Positions 1 to 59,651 of a DNA stretch of 64,000 nucleotides are shown here, piece by piece. Both the position numbers and the translations under genes were made by a program. The notes under the pieces are model-generated. The model saw nothing but the letters and a program-made list of their open reading frames with translations, ran no database searches and was not told the origin of the DNA. Position 1 is the first letter of the stretch. Each line of letters starts with the position of its first letter. Source of the DNA: Octopus bimaculoides (Eukaryota); contig NC_068984.1 in the NCBI RefSeq assembly GCF_001194135.2, forward strand, positions 130,479,744-130,543,743, written 5' to 3'.

Positions 1-2507
1 TGATCTCATAACATAAAGAGTTAGAAAAACTACTGCAAAGCATTTTGTCCAACACTAAAGATTTTTCCAATCCACTACCTGAAATCATAGTAATGTAAGA
101 CCATCTTTGTCACATAGAAGCTGAATCTTTTTGCACCTACAAAGTAATTTACAGCTAACTGAACGATTTTGTACATTTCCACTTGCATCAGATAATGAAT
201 TCAAACATAGATTTTAGAAGCCAAAATGCATTTTGCATGATCCAGACACAAACACGTTATGAAAAAGAGAAAACTGATGACATCATTTTGTCTAAAAAAG
301 AAAGCAGGATACTCCCATTCATATTTTGAATTTCTGTGTCTTTTTTTTCACTTTTCATTTTGAACCCAAGAAAGACAAACATGCTATCAAAAAATTGGTC
401 AATTCAATAAACAGACTCAATCCCTTATCACGCTCTTCTTATTGCCTATTATTGTTGTTGTGGGGTTCCTTGATTATCCCTAGGGGTCATCCTTTATCAG
501 GAGGACATCTCTATCATCCCCACTCCCTTTTTTTCTAACCTTTATATACTATGTATATTTCCCTTCATTTTCATTCTATAGTATGTATACTCACTCTTAT
601 TTATTTATTTTACCTTTTCATTATATGTAAACCCCTACACTTTATGTCTGTCTTGTACTGTCCCTTCAACCTTTGCATTGATGGCAAATAAATGAAATCA
701 TCATTATTATTATGTAATCTTATGTTTATTGCTTGCTTTCACAGAACAGTAACATAGTTCACTGGGCCTTAAGTATGGGCTGTGGTTTGCTTTTGGTGTT
801 GTTATTTTTACTGTATTAAGAGTGCACTGCATAGGACAAGTGGAGTGTCTAGTAATGCTAGTTTGTCTATGTTATAAATACTTGTTAGTCCTGGGGTTTT
901 GGTCACTTATTTGTCTCTATGCTTTTTGACTAAACCTAAAACACCTATTATCATAGAGATTGTTTCTGTCTTCAGGTTCCATGCAGTTACATAAGCTCTA
1001 TTATTGTGTGTGTGAATATGCTTGCAAGCACCTCTGTGAACAGGTGAGGGACAATAGCTTCAGACAGCCCACTTCTCTCTCTCCCTCTTTAAACATAGGC
1101 TTAGGAGCAGGGGATGCAGGGGTGCAAGTGCACCCCCTAAATTATAATTTTTTTTTGGTAGGGGTTGATGAAAATGCTTAGATTATTCTCCCGAAAAATT
1201 GGGTTTGCATCCCACTAAGCAAATTTCATTCACACACTTATGTCTTAAATATGTATATATATGTATGTATGTGTTTGGTATGTATGTATGTATGTATGTT
1301 TTGTATGTAAGTGTATGTGTGTCTGTCTATTTGTCCAACTGTATGTATATATGTACTTATGTGCACATGCATGTGCATATATATGCATTGAAAAGTAAAT
1401 AAGCAACTGAGATTCAATGACATCCTCTAAAACTATTTCCTGAAATTCTATCTTCTCTAAGATTCCAGTTCAGATTACACTAGACACATATTTATTTCAG
1501 TTATATACCCACCCATGTGTATATACTAAAGCCACAGCTGCCTGCACGAGAAGCATAATGATCAATCAAGCAAACAGTCAATACCACAACCACCACCACC
1601 ACCACTGGTGATGTGATGTGTCTCTGAAAACACACATCTCACATTGAGATATGAAATACTGCTGAAATTGGCAGGAGCATTGCATGTTGAATTCAAATTT
1701 TGGCACAAGGCCAGCAATTTCAAGGAAGCGGGTAAATCAATTATGTCAACCCCAGTGCTCAACTGGGGCTTATTTTATTGACTCCGACAGGATGAAAGGC
1801 AAAGTTGACCTTGATGGCATTTGAACTCTGAGCATTGGATGAAATGTTACTAAGCATTTTTCCCAGTGTGCTAACAATTCTGCCACCTCACTGCCCCAAG
1901 AGCTTTGTATATTAGCAATATGTGAAGTTAACTTGAAAAGGTGAGCCTAAATTGTAGCAGGTTTATAATGTGAAGAATGAGAGACTTCAATAGTTTTAAT
2001 TTCCCAACATATCTACACTCTCTGAGTGGTTGGCATTAGGAAGGGCATCCAGCTGTAGAAACTCTGCCAAATCAGATTGGAGCCTGGTGTAGCCATCTGG
2101 TTTCACCAGTCCTCAGTCAAATCGTCCAACCCATGCTAGCATGGAAAGCGGACGTTAAACGACAATGATGATATACAGGTGCAGGTGTGACTTCCCAACC
2201 ATATGGTTCTGAGTTCAGTTCCACTGCAAGGTACCTTGGGCAAGCATCTTCTATTATATATATAAATTATATATATAAATATCTTTTAAATTAATTTATG
2301 GTAACGGTAAAGGCATGCACATAAAGTTCCTATTTTATTATGCTGGCTACCATCTAATGATACTGACTAGTGAGTCAGTTTTTTTGGGGTTACATCATAG
2401 TTATACCAATATAATGTAGGATAAATATAATAATAACAATGATTCTTGCCAGCTCCTGTCGAATCATCTAAGGCATGTTAGCATGGAAGAAGGTCATTAA
2501 ATGATGA

Positions 2508-14743: not shown

Positions 14744-17259
14744 TTCTACACCAAAACAATTGGCAGTGAATTAATGATACCTTCATTTAGGACATGAAGA
14801 CATAATTCCCATTCCTTGAAGATTTTAAAGCTCATTTCCAACATCATATTTTGTGTGTACTGGGACTGGGTATGCTGGACATAATTTCAACTGTTTACAT
14901 TTACAGGACTGGACCTAGAAAGCTGTGGCGATTCTCAATTGCTATAATTTTAAACCTGATCTCACTCAGTTTACTTGTTGCTTAATCAACTTTCCTTGGC
15001 AAAAATCCTTACTAGTAGCATAAAATATTTCTGTATTAGAACCTAGCTGTACTACTGTTCCAATATTAAATCCTCATTCTGACTACACCATTGCAACAAA
15101 GCTAACCATGTCTGAGATGGACATTTTAGGTAAAATTCTTAAACAGTTTAAGATTCTTTATTTTCATCTGAGTACAACCGATTTCATAAATATAAATCCA
15201 TATTATAAACTCTGATTCTGGATCATTTTTGTTTGTAGAGAACCACAGCAACAAGAATATTAAATGTTAGCTGGAAATCATTAGTTGATTCTCCTGGTTT
15301 TTGCTTTAGGATCAGTTTTTAATCTGTTTAAAGTTATAATTCTCTGATTAAGTTTTGTAATTTTACATTTTCTATTGAATATTTTAAATTGAATAATCTA
15401 AATTTTCAATTGAACAATCTTAAATTATTGTATGGTTGCGTTTAAACCAATTAATGCAAGGGATTTTGAACTAGATGGGGCTTAGTGTTATCTATAGGCA
15501 GTTGTGAGCTACAGATAATTAACCATATATATCACCTTTGGCATTATCAAGACCCAGATGTTTGATTAGATTCCATCTTTATTGTTGTTAGCTGATAATT
15601 AGAGCTGTCATGTTTACGATAATTACCTAAGTCTACAGCAGTAAATTCAAAACATCAAACAGCTGTAATAACTTAGTGTCATAATTCACTAACATTATCC
15701 TCCTCGTTGTACAATATTAAAACTGTTTTTGATATCAAACTAGTAGTCACCTTAAACAGTTTTGGCCATGTGCAAGCATGCAAAACACATGCAACACCAC
15801 AACAAAATTAGCAGAACAATGATATAACAGACCTGTAGATAGACATAGTGTGCAGATACCAAATGGATATGTTTACGTATGAATAACTGAATGCTATAAC
15901 TGTAACAATATAGACTGCTCAAGTAGGGTTAACTGGGAGCTATATATAATCCTGTTTTGTAATAGGATTGACTATTACCATATATGGTATGAAACAAAAC
16001 CCCCCAAACACCAAAACTTAGGCAACACCAATAGTTCCTTCCACTGGCTTAAAATATAAACCTTCATGTATGGGTCATTGCCACAGATGGCTGGGATACT
16101 GTATAATTGTTGAGTGTTTTATAGGCAAGCAATGCTAAGCCTAAAAAGGTTTTGCAATAGAAACCTGAAGAGACAGAACTTCTGAGTTTCAGAAAGCTCA
16201 AATGTGCTACAAATGCCTACTGCTTTTTTTTTTTAATCTGTACCAACCAACATGACTGCCATTCAACATGAAATGCATATTGTGGACAGTTCCACATTTT
16301 CAGGAGTCCAAGGTGTTAAATAATAACAGTAATAACGACTCACCATTGTCGCCATGTATCGTATGCCTTTTGCAGTGCATATCTGACACTACCCTGAAAG
16401 TTTAAATGATTAAGTACAAGTCCTCTCATCAAATGAAGTTACAGCATTACTTTCGTTGAGACTTTCTCATAGTATTTTCTTGGCAGAGATATTGGGCTGG
16501 TTTGCCATTGCCTTCCCCAACTGGATGGGCATTGGCCCACAAGGAGCTCATCTGCCCTTCAGCAGGTCTTGTTTTTAGTCCTGCTGGTTATCCAGACACT
16601 ATCCTCTCATAAGAGTGGCAGGCTATTCAACTGGTGGAGCTGGTTTAGTTGCCGACCACTCAACCATGGAAGAGGAAATACTGGTTTTACATGGTACCAG
16701 TTGCAGGTCTCATCAGCCTGTGATGAGATCCCCGGCTTGACATAAACATTGTCTACTTCTACATAAAAACCTCTTTACACAGTCAACTAACATGCTAAAA
16801 ATAGCAGCTGTTTCTTCCTCGAATCACACCCTAATGTATTAAAAAATGGAATGACACATTGGAGAATGTAGTCATAAATATACAAAAAGACTGTCAATGA
16901 CAGTACAATTAATTAAAATGATAGTTGTGGTTGGAATGCTGACCTGAGGCTAAACCACAACTAACAACTATGACAACTTCTACATACAACCCTCAAGTAG
17001 AGGTAGGCCTCCAATATCCCTACGTTGGATATCTAGAAAATTTTCCCATAAAAGATATCTAAGAAAATCATCAGATCCCAATGATGTTACTGACAGTTCC
17101 TTGTAGAGTTTCTGACCAATCATAAAGACCGGCATGTTGTGGGTTTTAGTCAATGAGGATGAAGGAGAAACACACAGGATTTGAACTTTGCTGTATACAG
17201 ACGTCAATACATCCCTGGCAACTATTGGTGGTAGGTAGCCCTTAGATAATAGTGTGGAA

Positions 17260-17660
17260 AGTAATGATAATGATGTAACGGTGGTGCTGTTGCTGATGCT
17301 GGTGATGGTGCTGCTTCTGATTGTGAACACAATAGTGCAGTTGATTACGATGATGATGATGATGATGATGATAATGATGATGATAATGATAGTGGTGTTG
17401 AAAATGGTAACAATAATGATGATGATGATGATGATAGAAGAATTAATAATGATGATAATGGTGGTGGTGATGATGATGATGATGATGGTAACGCTAGTGA
17501 TAGTGGTAGCCATGCAGGTGTCAATGGCAGTAACTACTAATTAAGGTAATAGTGGAAATATTGGTTACAACGTTGACAGCGATGATGATGATGACGACGA
17601 CAATGATGACGATGATGATGATGATGATAATGGTGATGATGATGATGTTGATGATGATGA
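17260..17660 (+). repeat. (GAT/GGT)n microsatellite tract
   Basis: Direct reading; similar tracts at 38945-39090 and 59180-59580. Confidence 0.95.
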
Positions 17661-17669
17661 CAAACTTAC

Positions 17670-17690: not shown

Positions 17691-20600
17691 CTGAGGGCAA
17701 GAAAACAAAATCAAGAAAAAAAAAAAGACAAACAAATGAAGGAAAAAAAAACCCCAAAAAATATTCCTAGAATGATAGCAAAGCTGAGTTTTCCTTTTTT
17801 TTTTTTGAGATGTGGGTGGGGGAATATCTCTGATGTTTGAACTGGCAAATTACTATGACAACAACAGCAACAAAAACAAAAATAAATAAATAAAAAAAAA
17901 AGACCGAACCATACAAAACAGCAAACCGCTACCTAAACATGAACCAGCAAGAAAGGGTCAGTCAAATCTTCAACACGCTCCCTAGGGATCTTTAAAATAG
18001 GGACCACATTAGGTTAGCAGGAAAGAATCAATATATTCAGTTTCTTCCAATCTGTGTAGCAGCCAGATGTTCTTTCAGCAAACTCCTTAGTGACGTTAAT
18101 ATAAAGATTATTAGTTGTCTTTCTGTCTTTTACTTGTTTCAGTCATTGGACTGTGACCATGCTGGGGCACTGCCTTGAAGGGTGCCCCAGCATGGTCACA
18201 GTTGAACATATCAACCCCCATACATGTTTCGTACTTATTCTATTGGCCTCTTTTGCTGAGTTGCAAAGTAATGGGGATGCAAACAAACCAACACAAGCAC
18301 ACACACACATGATGGGTTTCCACAGTTTCCATCTATCAAATTTAATTAGAAGGAAGAGCACCCACTACACTCTCTGAGTGGTTGGCGGTAGGAAGGGCAT
18401 CCAGCTGTAGAAACACTGCCAAATCAGATTGGGGCCTGGTGTAGCCATCTGGTTTCACCAGTCCTCAGTCAAATCGTCCAACCCATGCTAGCATGGAAAG
18501 CGGACGTTAAACGACGATGATGATGATGATGATGATGATTGACCAGAGGCGATAGCAGAAGACATTTGCTTAAGGTGCCATGCAGTAGTACTGAACCTGA
18601 AACCACATGGTTGCACACTCTCACACACACACATCATCACCATCACATATATGACATACACTTATAAACACACAAATATACATAAATATAACCCCACCAC
18701 CCATTCACATACACATTCCAACACACATGCACACACATTTGTGTGATAATGTCCCGGAAAAAGACACTTTTTAAAACCCCCTTTTTTGGGGTACAAACTC
18801 ATCCAAGACGAATCCTGGTTCTGTGATACAAACTCCCCGTTTTAAAGTGATGTAAATTATAACTTTACTTCAAAATTTCATGTCAATTTATGTTACAAAC
18901 AAGAGCTTAATAATGACTAAGTTATTTTAATAAAGTCCTCATTATTTCAAAATTAATTGGACATAGACATTTTATTTCCCTGCTCTTTTGTCTTGCAAGT
19001 TACATTGCAATTTCACTAGAGCTTATGCCATGTAAAAAGCACCTAGTACACTCTGTAAAGTGGTTGGCATTAGAAAGGGCATCCAGCTGTAGAAACCATA
19101 CCAGAGCTGACATTGGAGCTTGATGTGGGCTTGCAGCTTGTGGGATGTGAAACCATCCTACTTATGCTAGCATGAAAAGTGGACTTTAAATTATGATGAT
19201 GATGATGACGACAACAACAAGGAATATTGTTACAAAAGGATTGAGGACATGTTCCAAGACCAAAGTTTCTGCAATGAAACACAAATGGCATCTCATCAGG
19301 TTGGGCCAAACTGGAAGATTTCACCCCACCCACCCAATCAGACCTTGTGAAGTAAGCAAGCCCTGCAGTAGAATCAGAAATCAAAAGAGATGCTTGAAGA
19401 GAAACTCTTAGCACTGAGGATGATTGCTGACCAAGTGTGCTGGAGAACTTTGCCAATGACCTCATGTGTGGAATGCTTTCATGTGTTGGAAGATAGATTC
19501 TAAACCAAATAGTGACAAGTTGCCATCACATCAACAATAGACAAAATGAAAGGAGACTATATGTTGGAAGAAAGTCTGGTCAGAAAAGAGGATACATAGA
19601 CAGAGCAATAAACATACATATATGCATACAGATACACATTCATCAGAGACAAACAATCACTTGCAAAGGAGTCTCTATATCAGTGCTCCACAACTGGTAT
19701 GCCATGGCACACTCGTGCGCAACAAGATAATGCTAGGTGTGCCACAGTGTAACCTGAGCATAACTTTTTTCCCAATACTATCAGCTACATTTTTAGTTCA
19801 GCTGTGCCACCAAATTTTGAAAAGAATATAAATGTACCACAAGTGAAAAAAGGTTGCAGAGCATTGTTCTGTGTCACTATTCAACCTGTTTAGAAATAGA
19901 AGCCAACTCTTCCTCAAATAACAGTGCTGTATACATTATGTTCTAAAAAACAAACAGACAGGATGGTCATAACTGGAATGTCTTTTACTATTGATCTGCT
20001 TGATCAGGATTAACCGGAGAGTTAATCGGAGAGACTACAAAAACAGGCTGTTTACAAATAAATGGGGAAACTAAATAGACAAGAGAAGTATAGGAATGTT
20101 AAAGCATGACCTTTCGGTCAGGTAACAATGGTCCCAACTAGTGGGTCTAATTGGCACTGTGTTGGTTATGATGACGAGGATTCCAGCTGATTCGATTAAC
20201 AGAACAGCCTGCTCATAAAATTAACATGCAAGTAGATGAGTACAGACAACACAGACATGTGTACCCTTAATGTAATTCTCAGGGAGATTCAGTGTGACAC
20301 AGAATGTGACAAAACTGGCCCTTTGAATTACAGACATAATTCATTTTTGCCAGCTGGGTGGACTGGATCAACATGAAATAGAGTGTCTTGCTCAAGGTCA
20401 CAACATGCCAACAGGAATCAAAATCAGGACTCTAAGCCAAATACGCTAACCACTAAGCCACACATCTTCACAACTAGTAGGTGGACTTATCCTAGCATAC
20501 AGGAATGAAAAAAGATGATGATAATGATAATATCAATGATGACTGCTATATTTCAAATCCCAAAGAAGGGAAATATGATGGATTTAATAATTAAGAAACA

Positions 20601-31771: not shown

Positions 31772-32154
31772 CATACATACACTCATATATGTATAATTAT
31801 ATACATTCATACACTGTATATATTCTGCAAGAGTGCTGGACGTAGTCAGATGGTTACCGGGGTTAGGGCTTTTCTATGAATAAGGCACACATTACGAACA
31901 ATGCAGCAGATGTAAAGCCAATCTTGGTAGAGTGATGGAATGTGAACGAGAGAATGAAGACGACGACGAAGAAATGTTGAAGAACACCAGCAAGAAGAGA
32001 TGAAGAGGAAGGAGAAAAAAACAAAGGAAAGAAGGAAGAATGTTTTTAAACAAAAATGAAAAAAAAACAATCAACACAAACAAAAAAAAAACTTCACAAA
32101 AACAAAATGCAGGTAGCCAGAGCAATGGTTGTCTAGACGGACTGCAATCCTTAC

Positions 32155-32448
32155 CTACAGGAACATGCATGGTATTGCGATTCTCAGGACTGGGTGGTTT
32201 GAACCGTGGAGGTGGCGGGTCTGAAGGCGTACGATAGTGACCCAAGAAAGAGGCATTGGGCTCGGACCAGTTCCTTGTATGGCCAGATGTTGGCGGTGGA
32301 ACAGGGGCTGGTGGCTTCTTTTTGGGCGGCAGTGGAGGCAGACTTGGTCCGCCTGCACCGCTGTGATTATAGCTGTAGGAAGTGGTGTGCAGCAAGGTTC
32401 CGTTGGTCTGTGAAGGTGCCGCTCCACCGATGCTATAGTGATTCAAAC
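32155..32448 (-). CDS. ASAP: ASAP proline-rich exon (LNHYSIGG...PSLPPLPPKKKPPAPVPPP...RTPSDPPPPRFKPPSPENRNTMHVPV)
   Basis: ttgcatcag|...GTAG|gtaagg; 294 nt, phase 1-1; PxxPxK/R motifs typical of the ASAP Pro-rich domain. Confidence 0.88.
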
Positions 32449-33861
32449 CTGATGCAAATAATGCTGATGAGGCAAAATAAACAACATGTCAATACAAGAA
32501 ACTTGCTTTGAGAGAGCAAATTGAGGAGATAGAGGAAGCGAGAGAGAGAAAAAGGGGTAAGGCAGGGAGGGAGGGTGGAAGGGAGATAGAGAGTGAAGGA
32601 GGGAGGGAGAAAGAAAGTGAGACAGGTAGGGACAGAGAAGGAACAATGAAATAAAAAGAGGAGGAGGAGGAGAAAAGAAAGATTGTATAATGAAAGAAAG
32701 GGAAGAGAAAAATACATAGGGAAACACACAGAATATTTACATATGTACCTTAACTTAATTTACATATTTACATCTGTACCTTAACTTAATTTTGCACTGC
32801 TGCAGTCATCAGGCAATTTTATTACTTGATGACAGTTGCAATGTGAAATGCAGAAAAGCAATCCGTGAAGACACAACTGTAAACATGTATTATTTTCACT
32901 TTACCAAGCTGTACAGAGTACTACTTGTGTTCAGGTGTAAAATAATTGTAAGCACCAAAACAGGATTTTGTCAGGGATTGATGATGGCAGTAAGTGACAA
33001 ACCATTCAGGTCCCTGGTGGACACATTAAAAACTTGTTTTTGTTAGTAACTGAGCTGACTGAGCTTAACCCATTAGATACCCAGTTGTAAACAACCTAAC
33101 CTTTTACAGATAAACAACATATTGAAATGTCATTAACAATTTTGTCTTTGGTGTCTTTTCATTGACAGATCACAGCTAATATAGGTAGTTTTGTCTGGTA
33201 ACTAGTGAGTGGTCTGGAATGATTCTATTACTTAAATGTATACACTAATATAAGCATTTTCACTTACATGTATGTTCCATTTTTTAAAATGGTTACATAC
33301 AAAACAGACCATTTGAATTATCTGTACAGCTGAAACCTATGCAATAATAGATGAAGAGTTGACATTATATTGTGTAATAAACACTGTCTATTCTACAACA
33401 CTACTGAGTTTTCTGTGTTTTTTTTCATGTTATCACACACTGATAAACATTACAGTATGTGTGTGTGTGTATACAAGCATAGCTGTGTGGGTAAGAAGCT
33501 TGTTTTGCAACCACATGGTTTCAAGTCCAGCCCCATTGTGTGGCACCTTGAGTAAGTGTCCTCTACTATAGCTTGGACCAACCAATGCTTTGTGAGCAAA
33601 TTTGGTGGACACAAACTGTGTGGAACTGTTTTTGTGTATGTGTGTCTTTGTGTTTCTCCCTCACCATTGCTTGACAACCAGCATTCCTTTTTCTTTTTAT
33701 ATCCCTGTAACTTAGCAGTTTGGCATAGAAACTGATAGAATAAGTATCAGACCTAAAAAGTAAGTACTGGGGTTGATTTGTTCAATTAAAACCCTTCAAG
33801 GCAGTGCCCCAGCATGGCCACAGTACAATGACTGAAATAAAAGATGAAAAAGATAAAAGAC

Positions 33862-38807: not shown

Positions 38808-39446
38808 TTAAATTTGGGTTGAGCTATGAGGAATAATTACCTTGCTTGGAAATAGGTGAGGGCTGGTGACAGAAAGCACACCCAGTCACAAAAAAATCTG
38901 CCTCAACAAATTCCATCTGACTTATGCAAGCATGGAAACTTGATGTTAAATGATGAAGATGATGATGATGATGATGGCGGTGAATGTGATGATGATGGTG
39001 GTGGTGGTGGTAATTATGACGATGATGATGGTGATGACAGTGATGATGATGATGATGGTAATGACAGTGATGATGATGATGACAATAATGATGTCCTGGG
39101 GTGTTCAGTTCTTAAAAAAGCCACAGCTGACACTTAGTGATCATTTGAATCCAAGAAATGAACCACTCCAAAAGGAGTTTAGTATGTCTTGTGTAGCATC
39201 TATAAATATTTTAGCAGAAAAATGTCAATAAACTGGACGTGAAGAAGAAACAAAAAAAAAACAAAAAAACTTTTAGGAAAGTTTTAAAGAATTTGCTGCT
39301 TTTGAAGAGATTAGCAATAAAAGAAAGTTGAATAATTGAGAAGTTTAGTAATATAAATGGGCTGGAGTGGGAGAGAGATGAAGTTATAGGTTAAGATAGC
39401 ATACAAGAATGAGACCTCATATAAAGATAAGTTGTTGAGATAAAGT

Positions 39447-45184: not shown

Positions 45185-46508
45185 AGTATCAAAAGTTTCT
45201 GTTGAAAGTCAAAAGTGAAAGAAGAGTGCTCTGTATAGTCAGAGCTGAATGTTATTATTAATGTAGTCAACTGGCACAGTCAGGTGTACCTTAGGGTTCA
45301 AAATCCATATTTTCTAGACAGTCATTTAATGCCTATGTTTCTAATCGATCTTTCATCAGTACCCAGATCAATTCTGTCCCTTTGAATCACATGATTCCAC
45401 TCTGTGGGATGGTTGGTGTTAGAAAGGGCATCCAGCTGTAGAAACCGTGTCAAAACAGACACTGAAGCCTGGTCCAGTCTCCTGCCTAACCAGCTCCTGT
45501 CAAACCGTCCAACCCATGCCAGCATGGAAAGCAGACGCTAAATGATGATGATCTCAAATTAACATCACCATCTTAATTGGGACTAATGAGAAATGTAGGC
45601 ATTAAATAATTGTCCTTAAATATAGATTTTGAAACCTAAGGTACTCTTAACTGTACTGGTAGACTATAATAATAATAATAATAATAATATTAATAACACC
45701 AATATTACATGTATCCATTTTGTATGTGAGTTTATGCATATGTGTTTGTATGCATTGCATATATGTGAGCATGTGCACACGTCTGTGTGTGAATGCATGT
45801 GTAGGTTTGTAAATTCTTATTCAGTTGTGACAATGTGTGTTGAATGTGTGAGAGTGTGCAAGACAACATTTAGAGAAGTATTAGCAGAAGCTGTCCAGAG
45901 TAAGTGGACAAGAGCTGGCTAAATTAAATGAAGAATGTCTGGTCAAATTGAAGTGTACAGGAATTGTCCCAAGTTAATAACAAGCAGCACCAATTTTGAT
46001 TAAATAGACCATAATTAGCTGAATTTAATTATCTGGACACGTCCATAATAGGTGGGGGATGGGACATAAAATAACCCTTTTTTCTTTTTTTTGTTTTCTT
46101 TTTTTTATTCACTTTTTCAACATTATTTTTATTTCACACTGAAATATTTGATGTCTTTTATTTATTTTTGTTTTTTTGTTTTTTTTTGAGAGAGAATATT
46201 CTAGATTTTCATCAGGCAGAAACAAGGTGGACATGATCACAAGAAACACTGCACAACAACAAAACAACCAACATCACCACCACAACAACAACAGCAGCAT
46301 GAACAACAATAACAACAGCAAGAACAACAAAAAACAGCAACAGCAACAACAACAGAAACAAGTAATAAAAAACCAAAAAAAAAACCAACCATAAATCATA
46401 CATAGCAAAATAGTTTGAAAATGTTTGAAATGCAAAGGGAGGAGCATGTGCGAAGGGGGCCATAAAAAAAGGGGGTCAAAGAAAACTGAAAGTGGAAACA
46501 TGGCTTAC

Positions 46509-46674
46509 TTGTCGGTTTGTTTAGAGGTGGTGGCAATGGCGGGGGCCGACTGGTCTCAAGTTCTCCCTTATCTCGATAGACAGCCTCTCGAGAAACTGAG
46601 GCTGCACTTGATGTTTCATTGATACCAATCACACTCGACGGTCTCGATCGTGGTTTCTTGTACTCCGGTACTCC
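46509..46674 (-). CDS. ASAP: ASAP exon (GVPEYKKPRSRPSSVIGINETSS...RPPPLPPPLNKPT)
   Basis: ctactatag|...|gtaagc; 166 nt, phase 0-1; the RSRPxS motif parallels RSPRPQS of ASAP1; Pro-rich SH3-ligand motif. Confidence 0.88.
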
Positions 46675-46884: not shown

Positions 46885-47316
46885 TTTGACGACTGGCACC
46901 CATGCCAACGTCGTCTCCTTCATTGGAAACGAAACTTGGCTTGCAAAGATCTATTGGGGCAAGCGAAAGCAAAATCATGATGGCACCTGTGCCCAGCATC
47001 ACCTTCCTGGCACTTGTGCCAGATGGCACATGTAAAGATATTCNNNNNNNNNNTGAAATTGTTGCCAGTGCCCCTGGACTGGCTCTTGTGCGGGTGGCAC
47101 ATAAAATACACCATTTTGAGCGTGGCCGTTGCCAGTACCGCCTGACTGGCATATGTGCCGGTGGCACATAAAAGCACCCACTACACTCTCGGAGTGGTTG
47201 GCATTAGGAAGGGCATCCAGCTGTAGAAACTCTGCCAAATCAGATTGGAGCCTAACCCTAACCCTAACCCTAACCCATGCTAACATGGAAAGCGGACGTT
47301 AAACGATGATGATGAT
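46885..47316 (+). mobile_element. Longer copy of the (GAT)n-tailed retroposon, with internal ~60-bp repeat units and a telomeric patch
   Basis: Internal units TTGCCAGTGCCCCTGGACTGGCTCTTGTGCGGGTGGCACAT followed by the family 3' end. Confidence 0.75.
47251..47276 (-). repeat. Interstitial telomeric repeat (TTAGGG)4
   Basis: Plus strand CC(TAACCC)4. Confidence 0.95.
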
Positions 47317-48160
47317 GTGTCTGCATAGGGGCACTCTTCTACATTATTTTGCACTTATTCCTAAGGTTAGATAAATTGGGACAATGTCAGTTTCAACAAT
47401 GATGGTTCCAGTTGATTCAATCAACAAAATAACTGGCACGATTGACATGTCAAAGGTTTATCAATGAACCAATCAACATTACAAGATTAGCCCTTCAGCA
47501 TTTAAACTGGCCATATCTGGCCTAAATATTCTACTTGTTTAATCCTAAAACTAGACAGATTTGGCTTCTCACACCTACCTTACAATGTTACTCCAAAGAT
47601 TAAACCCTCCCAATATCGAAACCTCAAGGCTACAAGACCTTGCATGATCCATTCAAAACAATGTAAATAAATAAGCATTACACTTGACAAAGAAATCTGA
47701 ATGCTAAAGGGTAAAAGAAAAATGAACCAAGAAAAATATCTCAGAATGGCCAATGGCATATATTTGAACATCATAAACAAAAACAGCTATGTCTAATAGT
47801 GTACAACATTATTTCTTGATGTATTGAGATTGTCTCTAAGGGATGTATCTCTATTATCAAATGGCATCTAAGACCAGCTCCATTTAAAAACTTGAATCTA
47901 GATGCCAAACTTTAAAATCCTTTCAGAGCCCACGACACATATTTACATATCTAATATCTCCACATATGTATGCTCAATATTGATACATGTTGTTTTATAG
48001 ACACAACTTTTATACAAACAATAACAAGGGGGGTTATATACAGATTGTCACAACAGGTAGGGTCAGCCACCAAAGATATATTGGCATTCACAACATATAA
48101 AAATACACACACACACAATAGATAGTCACCTCAGATAAATGAAATAGAAATGTTACTTAC

Positions 48161-50332: not shown

Positions 50333-50667
50333 CAGTTTCACACTATAATGTGAAAGAGTCAATTCCAAACTTAATATTCTCCAACAAAAAAATTCCTGCC
50401 CGAAACATTAAACATCCCCTCTTTCTCCTGGAATTATATTTATTCCACTGGGAAAAATCATAACAACTGCACAGCAATAAACCAACAAAAGAAAGTCAAT
50501 CCAGATTCATTGCTATGATATCTAAAGAATGAGAGACAACCCCTGATAACAAAAGCAGTAGATCCAACCAAACTTACCATCAGAATCATAAAAGACAGAC
50601 AAGGGCAATTCCAACCTTCTTACCAGTCATGATATCTAGAAGAGGATGGGATTAATCCCAAACTTAC

Positions 50668-50736
50668 CACCATAAGATCCCAGTCAATGTTGACGTTTTC
50701 AAATAAATCTTTTCTGTTCTCCAAAGCAGCTTTTAT
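50668..50736 (-). CDS. ASAP: ASAP post-ankyrin exon (IKAALENRKDLFENVNIDWDLMV)
   Basis: ataatttcag|...|gtaagt; 69 nt, phase 0-0; the VxIxW pattern matches the ASAP HVEYEW region. Confidence 0.88.
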
Positions 50737-52697: not shown

Positions 52698-54154
52698 CTG
52701 CAATTAGAATGAAACCATGTCAGCCTTGTCATATAACTCAATTAAAACACTCAAACACAGATGTTGTCGTCATCATCATCATCATCACTATCAACCCCAG
52801 CACATTACCGTCTTAGGTCCTATGACTCATTAGGCCACACACACACATACATACAAGAATATAAGAAACGAATAACAGCATAACCAAAACAAAATACCCT
52901 TGTTTAAAACTGACTAATGACAAATCAATGAAAGAGCCCCAATGTGTTAGCTCAGCTTGCTAGAAATACAAGCTAAATCTTCCTTAAATCTGAATAATGT
53001 AGTCTGAGACGTACACATGACAAAAAAAAAAAAAATGAGATGGTCATGACACGACCAAAATATTTAAAGAATATTAGAGATTGACCAGTTCAGATATTGT
53101 AAATGTAAAATTGGGAGTTTTACCCATACAAATGTTATAGATACGAAGTAGGGTTTTGGTGAGTTGAGATGTTCTCGATATACAACCAGGAGTGTTTTAC
53201 CATGTCTACATTATATAAATATCTAAATATTGTAAATAGAAACATGGAAACTGATTAGTTGGAAAACTGTAGGTATATAAATCAAAGACTGACAAGAGCA
53301 GTTGTACATATAGAATTAGGAATATGATTATTTCCACAGAGTAAAATATATATTAGAGAGATTAATCAGTGCAAATGTTGCTCATATAAAACTAGGAGAT
53401 TTATCTTCTAGGTATTGTGCATGTGTACCTCTCTCTCTGTCTGTCTATATATATATATATATATNNNNNNNNNNNNNNNNNNNNNNNNNNNNNNNNNNNN
53501 NNNNNNNNNNNNNNNNNNNNNNNNNNNNNNNNNNNNNNNNNNNNNNNNNNNNNNNNNNNNNNNNNNNNNNNNNNNNNNNNNNNNNNNNNNNNNNNNNNNN
53601 NNNNNNNNNNNNNNNNNNNNNNNNNNNNNNNNNNNNNNNNNNNNNNNNNNNNNNNNNNNNNNNNNNNNNNNNNNNNNNNNNNNNNNNNNNNNNNNNNNNN
53701 NNNNNNNNNNNNNNNNNNNNNNNNNNNNNNNNNNNNNNNNNNNNNNNNNNNNNNNNNNNNNNNNNNNNNNNNNNNNNNNNNNNNNNNNNNNNNNNNNNNN
53801 NNNNNNNNNNNNNNNNNNNNNNNNNNNNNNNNNNNNNNNNNNNNNNNNNNNNNNNNNNNNNNNNNNNNNNNNNNNNNNNNNNNNNNNNNNNNNNNNNNNN
53901 NNNNNNNNNNNNNNNNNNNNNNNNNNNNNNNNNNNNNNNNNNNNNNNNNNNNNNNNNNNNNNNNNNNNNNNNNNNNNNNNNNNNNNNNNNNNNNNNNNNN
54001 NNNNNNNNNNNNNNNNNNNNNNNNNNNNNNNNNNNNNNNNNNNNNNNNNNNNNNNNNNNNNNNNNNNNNNNNNNNNNNNNNNNNNNNNNNNNNNNNNNNN
54101 NNNNNNNNNNNNNNNNNNNNNNNNNNNNNNNNNNNNNNNNNNNNNNNNNNNNNN

Positions 54155-54779: not shown

Positions 54780-55083
54780 CTGGCTCTTGTGCGGGTGACA
54801 CATGAAATGTTTCGAGCGGGCTCGATGCCAGTGCCCCTGGGCCGGCTTGCGGGTGACACATGAAATCTTTCGAGCGAGATCGTTGCCGGTGCCCCTGGGC
54901 CGGCTTGCGGGTGACACATGAGGTTTTTCGAGCGAGGTCGTTGCCGGTGCCCCCGGGCTGGCTTGTGTGCGGGCGACACATGGGGTCTTTCGAGCGGGAT
55001 CGTTGCCAGTGCCCCTGGACTGGCTCTTGTGTGGGTGACACATGAAATCTTTCGAGCGGGATCGTTGCCAGTGCCCCTGGACT
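54780..55083 (+). repeat. GC/CpG-rich minisatellite, ~58-62-bp unit, 5 visible copies, running into the gap
   Basis: Unit CTGGCTCTTGTGCGGGTGACACATGAAATCTTTCGAGCGGGATCGTTGCCAGTGCCCCTGGA with variants. Confidence 0.92.
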
Positions 55084-55722
55084 NNNNNNNNNNNNNNNNN
55101 NNNNNNNNNNNNNNNNNNNNNNNNNNNNNNNNNNNNNNNNNNNNNNNNNNNNNNNNNNNNNNNNNNNNNNNNNNNNNNNNNNNNNNNNNNNNNNNNNNNN
55201 NNNNNNNNNNNNNNNNNNNNNNNNNNNNNNNNNNNNNNNNNNNNNNNNNNNNNNNNNNNNNNNNNNNNNNNNNNNNNNNNNNNNNNNNNNNNNNNNNNNN
55301 NNNNNNNNNNNNNNNNNNNNNNNNNNNNNNNNNNNNNNNNNNNNNNNNNNNNNNNNNNNNNNNNNNNNNNNNNNNNNNNNNNNNNNNNNNNNNNNNNNNN
55401 NNNNNNNNNNNNNNNNNNNNNNNNNNNNNNNNNNNNNNNNNNNNNNNNNNNNNNNNNNNNNNNNNNNNNNNNNNNNNNNNNNNNNNNNNNNNNNNNNNNN
55501 NNNNNNNNNNNNNNNNNNNNNNNNNNNNNNNNNNNNNNNNNNNNNNNNNNNNNNNNNNNNNNNNNNNNNNNNNNNNNNNNNNNNNNNNNNNNNNNNNNNN
55601 NNNNNNNNNNNNNNNNNNNNNNNNNNNNNNNNNNNNNNNNNNNNNNNNNNNNNNNNNNNNNNNNNNNNNNNNNNNNNNNNNNNNNNNNNNNNNNNNNNNN
55701 NNNNNNNNNNNNNNNNNNNNNN

Positions 55723-58209: not shown

Positions 58210-58386
58210 TGGCACGTAAAAGCACCCACTACACTCTCGGAGTGGGTGGCGTTAGGAAGGGCATCCAGCTGTAGAAACTCTGCCAAATCAGATTGGAGCC
58301 TGGTGTAGCCATCTGGTTCACCAGTTCTCAGTCAAATCGTCCAACCCATGCTAGCATGGAAAGCGGACGTTAAATGATGATGATGA
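58207..58386 (+). mobile_element. Young retroposon 3' portion with (GAT)n tail
   Basis: CACTACACTCTCGGAGTGG...CCAACCCATGCTAGCATGGAAAGCGGACGTTAAA(TGA)n; near-identical copies at 2016-2170, 18361-18540 and 47168-47316. Confidence 0.85.
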
Positions 58387-59150: not shown

Positions 59151-59651
59151 CTGCAAAGAAAGAAATAGGTAGATATGGTATTGTAAGTGGTGGTGGTGGT
59201 GGTGGTGGTGGTGGTGATGGTGGTGGTGGTGGTGAAACTGATCACTGATGGTAGTGTTAAGGGCGGTAGCAGAGGTAGTGATTGTAGTAGTGGTGTTTGG
59301 GTCATAGTGACGGTGGTGCTGATGGTGGTAATGATTGTGGGAGGGGCATGTTGGTGGTAAAGTAGCAATGGCAATGTGGTGGTGGTGGTGGTGGTAATGA
59401 TGATGATGATGAAGAAGGTAATGACGATAATTATGATGATGATGGCAATGATGATGATGACGATGATGATGATGATGGCGATGATGATGATGATGGCGAT
59501 GATGATGATGATGGCGATGATGATGATGATGACGACAGCAGTTATTACAACAATAATAAGTTTGATTATAGTGATGACAGCAAGCTAATGTTGCCCAGGA
59601 AACCACATCAAGAAACTTTGAAAAAAAAAAAAAAAAAAAAAGAGAAAATAC

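What the first reader, a model, noticed from the sequence alone, without database searches (positions are those of the whole stretch)
47241..47290. Telomeric (TTAGGG)4 patch replaces 43 bp inside a SINE copy: likely telomerase-assisted break repair
Seen: intact copies (2016-2170, 18361-18540) read ...GATTGGRGCC-[43 nt TGGTGTAGCC...ATCGTCC]-AACCCATGC. Here the 43 nt are replaced by 19 nt TAACCCTAACCCTAACCCT, in register with the SINE's own AACCC on one side and CC on the other. On the minus strand the SINE end ...GCATGGGTT is extended by AGGGTT x3 plus A and rejoined through GG. Established: TTAGGG is the molluscan telomere repeat, and short in-phase interstitial telomeric insertions with a deletion at the junction are the footprint of telomerase acting at double-strand breaks. 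Inference: such an event was fixed in this intron, and the sibling copies give an internal pre-break reference.
Basis: partly seen in the sequence, partly recalled or inferred. Interest (0 to 1): 0.72.

Follow-up and report, generated by a model that had tools for sequence, protein, structure and literature searches.

The report
Telomere-repeat scar inside an octopus SINE
One copy of a common octopus mobile element, sitting in an intron, has 42 of its bases replaced by three perfect telomere repeats. This is the signature already described in mammals for a chromosome break patched with telomere sequence, so it is a tidy but probably ordinary example seen in a new animal group.

Summary
Window 47251-47276 is a perfect 26-nt CC(TAACCC)4 run and the only telomeric array in the window (0.03 expected by chance).

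It lies inside one young SINE copy (47170-47317). Measured against 26 other copies (7 in the window, 19 in five Octopus vulgaris loci), 42 nt of SINE are missing and 18 nt, exactly three hexamers, are new. No other copy has the patch or an intermediate.

On the minus strand the patch starts at ...GCATGGGTT. That is the only 3' end in the 160-nt element with 4 or more bases in telomere register. It rejoins through a 3-nt AGG microhomology.

This matches the short interstitial telomeric sequences of primates, rodents and horse, where "insertion plus deletion" is the commonest class and in-register bases are the argument for telomerase.

The host gene is an ASAP-like ArfGAP on the minus strand, and the site is intronic.

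I could not reach raw reads, the rest of the genome or the orthologous locus. Uniqueness, fixation and the timing of the event therefore remain untested, and telomerase is inferred, not shown.

Verdict: a new member of a known kind, of modest interest.

The parts
47251..47276 (-). Whole telomere-phase run, 26 nt. It reads CC(TAACCC)4 on the + strand and (GGGTTA)4GG on the minus strand, which is the sense strand of the host gene.
   Evidence: period 6, 4.3 copies, 100% matches; the only such array in the window.
47254..47271 (-). The 18 nt (three hexamers) that have no counterpart in any other SINE copy. This is the newly synthesised or inserted DNA.
   Evidence: Alignments.
47272..47276 (-). 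The SINE's own AACCC (GGGTT on the minus strand). Proposed 3' primer end, with 5 nt in telomere register.
   Evidence: Conserved as CCAACCCATGC in nearly all of the other 26 copies. It is the only 3' end in the 160-nt element with 4 or more in-register bases.
47251..47253 (-). The SINE's own CCT (AGG on the minus strand). This is the 3-nt microhomology at the rejoining junction.
   Evidence: Intact copies read GAGCCT|GGTG.
47170..47253 (+). Left arm of the SINE core, collinear with positions 1-84 of the intact core.
   Evidence: blastn 92.9% to the 18354 copy; 1 mismatch in 73 against the 2013 copy.
47272..47317 (+). Right arm of the same SINE plus its (GAT)n tail (47305-47317).
   Evidence: blastn 95.7%; 2-4 mismatches in 45-46 nt against the young copies.
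47054..47169 (+). 5' part of the same element, made of diverged units of about 58 nt (GTTGCCAGTRCCSCTGRCTGG...GGTGGCACATAAAA). It continues beyond the 10-N gap to about 46975.
   Evidence: Read directly. The same unit forms a 58-nt x 4.9 array at 54786-55080.
47044..47053 (.). 10-N scaffold gap about 200 nt upstream of the patch. It matters for assembly reliability.
2013..2172 (+). Intact sibling copy used as the pre-event reference. The segment missing in the target corresponds to 2086-2127.
18354..18524 (+). Intact sibling copy. The segment missing in the target corresponds to 18438-18479.
58218..58386 (+).
50653..50736 (-). Nearest confirmed upstream exon of the host ASAP-like ArfGAP gene. 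The patch lies in the intron that follows it.
   Evidence: tblastn of ASAP homologues; gene identity.
32150..32485 (-). Next homologue-confirmed downstream exon (proline-rich region). A possible unconfirmed exon lies at about 46399-46674.
   Evidence: P0041, 70% identity; ORF listings.

Best explanation
This is a short interstitial telomeric sequence left by repair of a DNA break inside a SINE copy that was already in place.

**Proposed steps (all inferred from the anatomy)**
1. A break fell within the 42-nt segment GGTGTAGCC...ATCGTCC.
2. The minus-strand 3' end was trimmed back to ...GCATGGGTT-3'. Its last five bases pair with the telomerase RNA template.
3. Telomerase added AGGGTT three times, plus AGG.
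4. The new G-rich tail annealed through AGG to the CCT of the other end (...GGAGCCT). The flap was removed and the gap was filled and ligated, as in microhomology-mediated end joining.

**Result**
42 nt of SINE were lost and 18 nt of perfect telomere repeat gained. The site is in an intron of an ASAP-like gene. The scar is most likely neutral.

**Shown:** the anatomy, the rarity, the position at the seed, and the absence of the patch from 26 other copies.
**Inferred:** the break, the enzyme and the order of events.
For: - The array is perfect and unique, far beyond chance.
- Both arms are collinear parts of one young SINE copy, with 1/73 and 3/45 mismatches to the 2013 copy.
- All 26 other copies keep the 42-nt segment and the CCAACCCATGC box or a close variant of it. 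They come from about 166 kb of two octopus assemblies. None has two or more telomeric units or any intermediate.
- The inserted DNA is exactly three hexamers. It is in register with 5 ancestral nt on the G-strand 3' side and 3 nt on the other side.
- GGGTT is the only one of 160 possible minus-strand 3' ends in the element with 4 or more in-register bases.
- TTAGGG is the telomere motif shown experimentally in an octopod.
- In mammals, ITS insertion with a flanking deletion is the commonest class: 50-52% of loci in PMC2246262 and 30% in PMC7215372.
- In PMC2246262, loci with 4 or more in-register bases make up about 17-20% against 0.39% or less expected. ITSs inside repeats were analysed there against the repeat consensus, as done here.
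Against: - There is no orthologous or allelic pre-event sequence. The 'ancestor' is inferred from paralogous copies.
- Only 26 other copies were sampled from a very large family, so a rare patched subfamily is not excluded (0/26 bounds the frequency only below roughly 11%).
- No telomerase-RNA-derived bases flank the repeats, and those would be the specific mark of telomerase.
- Other telomere-templated routes, or template switching during the SINE's own reverse transcription, would give the identical product.
- Read support is untested, and the site is about 200 nt from a scaffold gap.
- The telomere motif and germ-line telomerase activity of this particular species were not verified.
Confidence: 0.5

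Rival explanations
1. The patch arose during retrotransposition, or was inherited from a patched source copy. While the SINE RNA was being reverse-transcribed, the nascent cDNA end ...GCATGGGTT-3' switched to a CCCUAA-containing template (telomerase RNA, or telomerase itself took over). It then returned to the SINE RNA 42 nt further on through AGG/CCU. Alternatively, a master copy already carried the patch.
For: The first-strand cDNA of a + oriented SINE is the minus strand, so its growing 3' end passes through exactly the same GGGTT primer (sequence logic). The skipped 42 nt contain an inverted repeat, CTGGTG...CACCAG. The copy is young. Nothing at the locus dates the patch relative to the insertion.
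Against: It needs two precise template switches. 0 of 26 other copies share the patch. The hairpin in the skipped segment is no more stable than in shuffled sequence (z = -0.6).
Confidence: 0.15
2. Break repair without telomerase. Either an extrachromosomal telomeric DNA fragment was captured, or a repair polymerase copied telomeric DNA or telomeric RNA (for example extension of the + strand end ...GCCT on a UUAGGG transcript). Microhomology joins then formed at both ends.
For: The product would be identical. Microhomology at both junctions (5 nt and 3 nt) is what microhomology-mediated joining uses. PMC2246262 names fragment capture as the earlier alternative. Templated insertions at breaks are documented (PMC5110952, listed).
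Against: An 18-nt insert of exactly whole hexamers is very short for fragment capture. The mammalian data favour telomerase, from the excess of in-register bases and the TERC-ITS loci. There is no direct evidence either way here.
Confidence: 0.12
3. Assembly or gap-closing artefact. The patch is not in the animal's DNA.
For: This is a draft scaffold with eight N runs. One is a 10-N gap about 200 nt away, and the site is inside a high-copy repeat.
Against: The new DNA is only 18 nt (26 nt in phase). Any assembly k-mer longer than about 27 nt that crosses it must carry SINE sequence on both sides, so it cannot be built from pure telomere reads (inference). Both arms are collinear, in the right order and from the same subfamily. 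The patch lies inside a 6.4-kb gap-free contig.
Confidence: 0.07
4. A simple 42-nt deletion created CCTAACCC. Polymerase slippage then expanded it into a hexanucleotide microsatellite that happens to equal the telomere repeat.
For: A clean deletion would leave CCTAACCC, which is 8 nt in telomere phase (sequence logic).
Against: The starting point would hold only 1.3 units, below what slippage needs. It requires two adjacent independent events and an outcome identical to the host telomere motif. None of the 26 copies shows a duplicated AACCC(T) unit. PMC2246262 argues that ITS birth is distinct from microsatellite birth.
Confidence: 0.05

Closest known systems
Short interstitial telomeric sequences inserted at double-strand breaks in primates, rodents and horse (Nergadze et al. 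2007, PMC2246262; Santagostino et al. 2020, PMC7215372)
   Same: A few exact telomeric hexamers at an internal, non-subtelomeric site. Flanks are collinear with an ITS-less reference. A short flanking deletion is present, which is the commonest class. Ancestral bases at the G-strand 3' side are in register. Loci inside repeats are judged against the repeat consensus.
   Different: The host is a cephalopod mollusc; my literature searches found sequence-level work of this kind only for vertebrates. The reference is paralogous copies only, with no orthologous empty locus. At 4.3 units the array is at the lower limit of their screen.
TERC-ITS loci (Sola et al. 2021, PMC8537989)
   Same: Telomeric repeats added in one step at a break site.
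   Different: Those loci carry bases retrotranscribed from non-template parts of telomerase RNA, which proves telomerase involvement. No extra bases are present here, as both junctions are seamless.
De novo telomere addition, also called chromosome healing or neotelomere formation (bioRxiv 10.1101/2022.10.31.514589; references in PMC2246262)
   Same: Telomerase priming on a broken 3' end that has 1-5 nt of homology to the repeat.
   Different: Healing leaves a terminal telomere and loses the distal fragment. Here only three units were added and the two ends were rejoined.
Templated sequence insertions at repaired breaks (PMC5110952)
   Same: A short templated insert plus a deletion with junction microhomology.
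   Different: Those templates are ordinary genomic or RNA sequence. Here the insert is pure telomere repeat in whole units.

Membership tests
Short ITS inserted at a DNA break (Nergadze/Giulotto class) | [quoted passage not shown] | tested here: met
   47251-47276, 4.3 units, 100% matches. The criterion is quoted.
Short ITS inserted at a DNA break (Nergadze/Giulotto class) | The unit is the telomere repeat of the host lineage | tested here: met
   By literature only. TTAGGG is the only experimentally determined cephalopod motif (the octopod Amphioctopus areolatus; PMC13218726). It was not verified for the window's own species, and no chromosome end is present in the window.
Short ITS inserted at a DNA break (Nergadze/Giulotto class) | An ITS-less reference shows one-step insertion with collinear flanks | tested here: met
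   Met by proxy: 26 paralogous SINE copies, the approach used for ITSs inside repeats in PMC2246262.
Short ITS inserted at a DNA break (Nergadze/Giulotto class) | Ancestral bases at the G-strand 3' side are in register with the insert | tested here: met
   5 nt (GGGTT), the only site of 4 or more nt in the 160-nt element.
Short ITS inserted at a DNA break (Nergadze/Giulotto class) | Single-locus event, not a retrotransposed subfamily trait | tested here: inconclusive
   0 of 26 other copies in about 166 kb. No genome-wide scan was possible. Scans of metagenome, viral and prokaryote collections held no octopus SINE.
TERC-ITS | Non-template telomerase-RNA sequence adjoining the repeats | tested here: not met
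   Both junctions pass directly into SINE sequence, with no extra bases.
Fusion-type or subtelomeric ITS | Long, degenerate or head-to-head arrays at former chromosome ends | tested here: not met
   26 nt, perfect, one orientation, inside a SINE in an intron.
Slippage-born microsatellite | A proto-repeat of two or more units in the ancestral sequence, or intermediate lengths among relatives | tested here: not met
   The ancestral sequence has AACCC once, and none of the 26 copies shows an intermediate.
SINE (short retroposon) | Many dispersed copies with a simple-repeat 3' tail and a polymerase III (tRNA-like) head | tested here: inconclusive
   Dispersed copies and a (GAT)n tail are shown. 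No tRNA-like head was detected by ARAGORN or Rfam. Resemblance of the core to the Nin-DC/Deu domain is from memory only and was not tested.

The most novel reading that the evidence does not exclude
The SINE's conserved GGGTT box (CCAACCCATGC, present or nearly so in all 27 copies seen) may act as a preferred telomerase seed. If so, octopus genomes, which carry this SINE in very high copy number, would hold many independent patches. These would start at the same base but differ in repeat number and far junction. That would be a natural multi-copy reporter, and the first sequence-level evidence that telomerase takes part in germ-line break repair outside vertebrates.
Probability: 0.2. Interest if true: 0.55.

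Novelty: new member of a known kind. Interest (0 to 1): 0.33.

Why it matters
If confirmed, the telomere-repeat break-repair footprint would extend beyond the vertebrate genomes where the papers I found describe it, to a lophotrochozoan. That suggests the pathway is old and widespread.

The multi-copy SINE supplies an internal pre-event reference. It also offers a cheap genome-wide assay: count patches that begin at the GGGTT box.

For the locus itself the consequence is probably nil. The one caveat is that the patch places (UUAGGG)-type repeats, a minimal G-quadruplex motif, in the sense pre-mRNA of an ASAP-like gene's intron.

Tried and rejected
1. **Orthologous locus in a sister species.** Two protein searches with the host gene's exons returned ASAP homologues, all shorter than 700 aa, and no cephalopod genomic model. 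The O. vulgaris ASAP locus therefore could not be fetched.
2. **Independent assemblies of the same locus.** Exact look-ups of the two possible ORF products that cross the patch found nothing on record.
3. **Junction scan of metagenome contigs**. It gave 19 hits. All are unrelated GC-rich marine-eukaryote telomere-like tracts with no SINE flank. The 20-nt pattern was too telomere-heavy to be specific.
4. **SINE core scans.** The 20-mer is absent from viral contigs and prokaryote genome contigs, so no extra copies came from contamination.
5. **Hairpin idea.** The deleted segment holds the inverted repeat CTGGTG...CACCAG, but its fold is no better than shuffles (z = -0.6 and -0.35). I dropped it as a cause of breakage.
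6. **tRNA or Rfam identity of the SINE head.** Nothing was found.
7. **Slippage origin.** No intermediates were found.
8. **First SINE-ORF protein search**. It found only five annotated O. vulgaris ORFs, none with the VRVRVR stretch that the patch encodes. Their loci supplied the 19 extra copies.

Full report
**1. Observation**

Window 47241-47290 reads CAGATTGGAGCC(TAACCC)4ATGCTAACATGG.
- Exact (CCCTAA)3 lies at 47256-47273, and it is the only array of two or more telomeric units on either strand of the window.
- Tandem Repeats Finder reports 47251-47276, period 6, 4.3 copies, 100% matches.
- A telomeric 18-mer with up to three mismatches is expected 0.03 times per window in dinucleotide shuffles. 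All three matches lie at this one locus.
- A perfect 26-nt run has a chance expectation near 1.6e-10.

The window is a draft scaffold with eight N runs. One 10-N gap (47044-47053) lies about 200 nt upstream. The patch itself sits in a gap-free 6.4-kb contig.

**2. The element around it**

blastn with the copy at 18354 finds eight copies of one SINE core in the window.
- Young copies, 94-97% alike: 2013-2172, 18354-18524 and 58218-58386.
- The target: 47170-47317.
- Older copies: near 19035, 34700 (minus strand), 38476 and 45398.

Translated SINE ORFs hit only 'hypothetical predicted proteins' of Octopus vulgaris. The host is therefore an octopod.

The five O. vulgaris loci fetched through those proteins (GCA_951406725.2) add 19 more full or near-full cores.

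In a 27-copy alignment every other copy keeps the ~42-nt segment (GGTG[C/T]AGCC...CGTCC). All keep the following CCAACCCATGC box or a close variant of it. Only the target has telomeric sequence, and no copy has a duplicated AACCC(T) unit.

**3. Exact anatomy**

- Intact copies: GAGCCT | GGTGTAGCCATCTGGTTTCACCAGTCCTCAGTCAAATCGTCC | AACCCATGC.
- Target: GAGCCT | AACCCTAACCCTAACCCT | AACCCATGC.

So 42 nt are lost and 18 nt, exactly three hexamers at 47254-47271, are new. CCT (47251-47253) and AACCC (47272-47276) are ancestral SINE bases that happen to be in telomere phase.

The two arms are collinear parts of one young copy, with 1/73 and 3/45 mismatches to the 2013 copy.

On the minus strand the locus reads GCATGGGTT + (AGGGTT)3 + AGG|CTCC. 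That gives five in-register bases on the G-strand 3' side and a 3-nt AGG overlap at the rejoin.

I scored every possible minus-strand 3' end of the intact 160-nt element. Only ...GCATGGGT (4 nt) and ...GCATGGGTT (5 nt) have four or more bases in telomere register. The patch therefore begins at the single best telomerase seed in the element, which argues for a homology-guided process rather than blunt capture.

**4. Genomic context**

A concatenated-exon search identifies the gene on the minus strand as an ASAP-type ArfGAP, with PH, ArfGAP, ANK and proline-rich parts.

tblastn of the homologues maps these exons:
- 63638-63489
- 62273-62202
- 61511-61455
- 60901-60836
- 59823-59653
- 59154-59011
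- 57599-57492
- 56460-56242
- 52699-52502
- 50736-50653
- 32485-32150

The SINE lies in the intron after the 50.65-kb exon and is antisense to the gene. The G-rich strand is therefore the sense strand. A proline-rich ORF at 46399-46674 may be a further exon, but no homologue confirmed it.

**5. Mechanism**

The best reading is a break within the 42-nt segment, followed by these steps:
- The minus-strand 3' end was trimmed back to GGGTT.
- Telomerase extended it by three units plus AGG.
- The tail annealed through AGG/CCT to the other end, and the gap was filled and ligated.

The anatomy is shown. The break, the enzyme and the order of events are inferred.

This matches what PMC2246262 and PMC7215372 describe for mammals:
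- ITS insertion with a flanking deletion is the commonest class, at 50-52% and 30% of loci respectively.
- One to eight in-register bases occur far more often than chance. Loci with four or more make up about 17-20%, against 0.39% or less expected.
- ITSs inside repeats were analysed against the repeat consensus, as done here.

TTAGGG is the only experimentally determined cephalopod telomere motif, found in the octopod Amphioctopus areolatus (PMC13218726).

**6. Rivals**

- **(a) Event during retrotransposition.** The first-strand cDNA made during this SINE's own retrotransposition is the minus strand. Its growing end passes through the same GGGTT primer. The patch could therefore have arisen during insertion by template switching, or been inherited from a patched master copy. 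Nothing at the locus dates the patch, and 0/26 bounds the frequency of a patched subfamily only below roughly 11%.
- **(b) Repair without telomerase.** Fragment capture, or copying of telomeric DNA or RNA by a repair polymerase, gives the same product. No telomerase-RNA-derived bases, the specific mark in PMC8537989, are present.
- **(c) Assembly artefact.** This is unlikely, because any k-mer longer than about 27 nt that crosses the patch must carry SINE sequence on both sides. Reads were not available to confirm it.
- **(d) Deletion followed by slippage.** This would need expansion from 1.3 units, and it has no intermediates.

**7. What could not be done**

Protein searches returned no cephalopod ASAP gene model, and every hit was under 700 aa.
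- Exact look-ups of ORFs crossing the patch found nothing.
- The metagenome junction scan returned only unrelated marine-eukaryote tracts.
- The SINE core is absent from the viral and prokaryote collections.
- A hairpin in the deleted segment is no better than shuffles.
- Rfam and ARAGORN found nothing in the window.

**8. Verdict**

The feature is a new member of a known kind: a short ITS break-repair scar, here in a mollusc, where my literature searches found no sequence-level precedent. Interest is modest.

It would rise if a genome-wide scan showed recurrent patches seeded at the SINE's GGGTT box.

Noticed in passing
window 54786-55080 (and 46975-47169): A 58-nt unit (…GTTGCCAGTGCCCCTGGGCTGG…GGTGACACATGAAA…) forms a 4.9-copy tandem array that runs into an N gap. 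Diverged copies of the same unit make up the 5' part of the patched SINE. The family therefore seems to carry a variable-number tandem repeat in its head, which is probably why the assembly breaks there.
   Followed up: partly
window 32150-63638, minus strand: Eleven exons of an ASAP-type ArfGAP gene (PH, ArfGAP, ANK and proline-rich parts) are spread over more than 31 kb. One ANK-region exon expected from the homologues is missing and may lie in the N gaps at 53465-54154 or 55084-55722.
   Followed up: partly
window 47256-47276, minus strand: The patch creates GGGTTAGGGTTAGGGTTAGGG, a minimal telomeric G-quadruplex motif. It is one of only two G4-pattern matches on the gene's sense strand in the window, and it also adds three UAGGGU motifs to the pre-mRNA. 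A possible effect on splicing was not tested.
   Followed up: no
L004 3704-4539 (O. vulgaris OX597840.1): Six SINE 3' halves sit head-to-tail at a regular 137-bp spacing, so part of the SINE has been amplified into a small tandem array.
   Followed up: no
L002 15202-15347 (O. vulgaris OX597822.1): Two SINE 3' halves lie in inverted orientation and overlap at about 15266-15270, forming a palindromic arrangement.
   Followed up: no
L013, L017, L024 (marine metagenome contigs): GC-rich marine-eukaryote contigs carry head-to-head telomeric tracts, (TTAGGG)n-TTGGGGCC-(TAACCC)n. Several other contigs share identical flanks next to long CCCTAA arrays. All are unrelated to the octopus locus.
   Followed up: no
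window 17343-17661, 59447-59533, 38924-38976: Long (GAT/ATG)n microsatellites have the same unit as the SINE tail, and some have no recognisable SINE body next to them.
   Followed up: no
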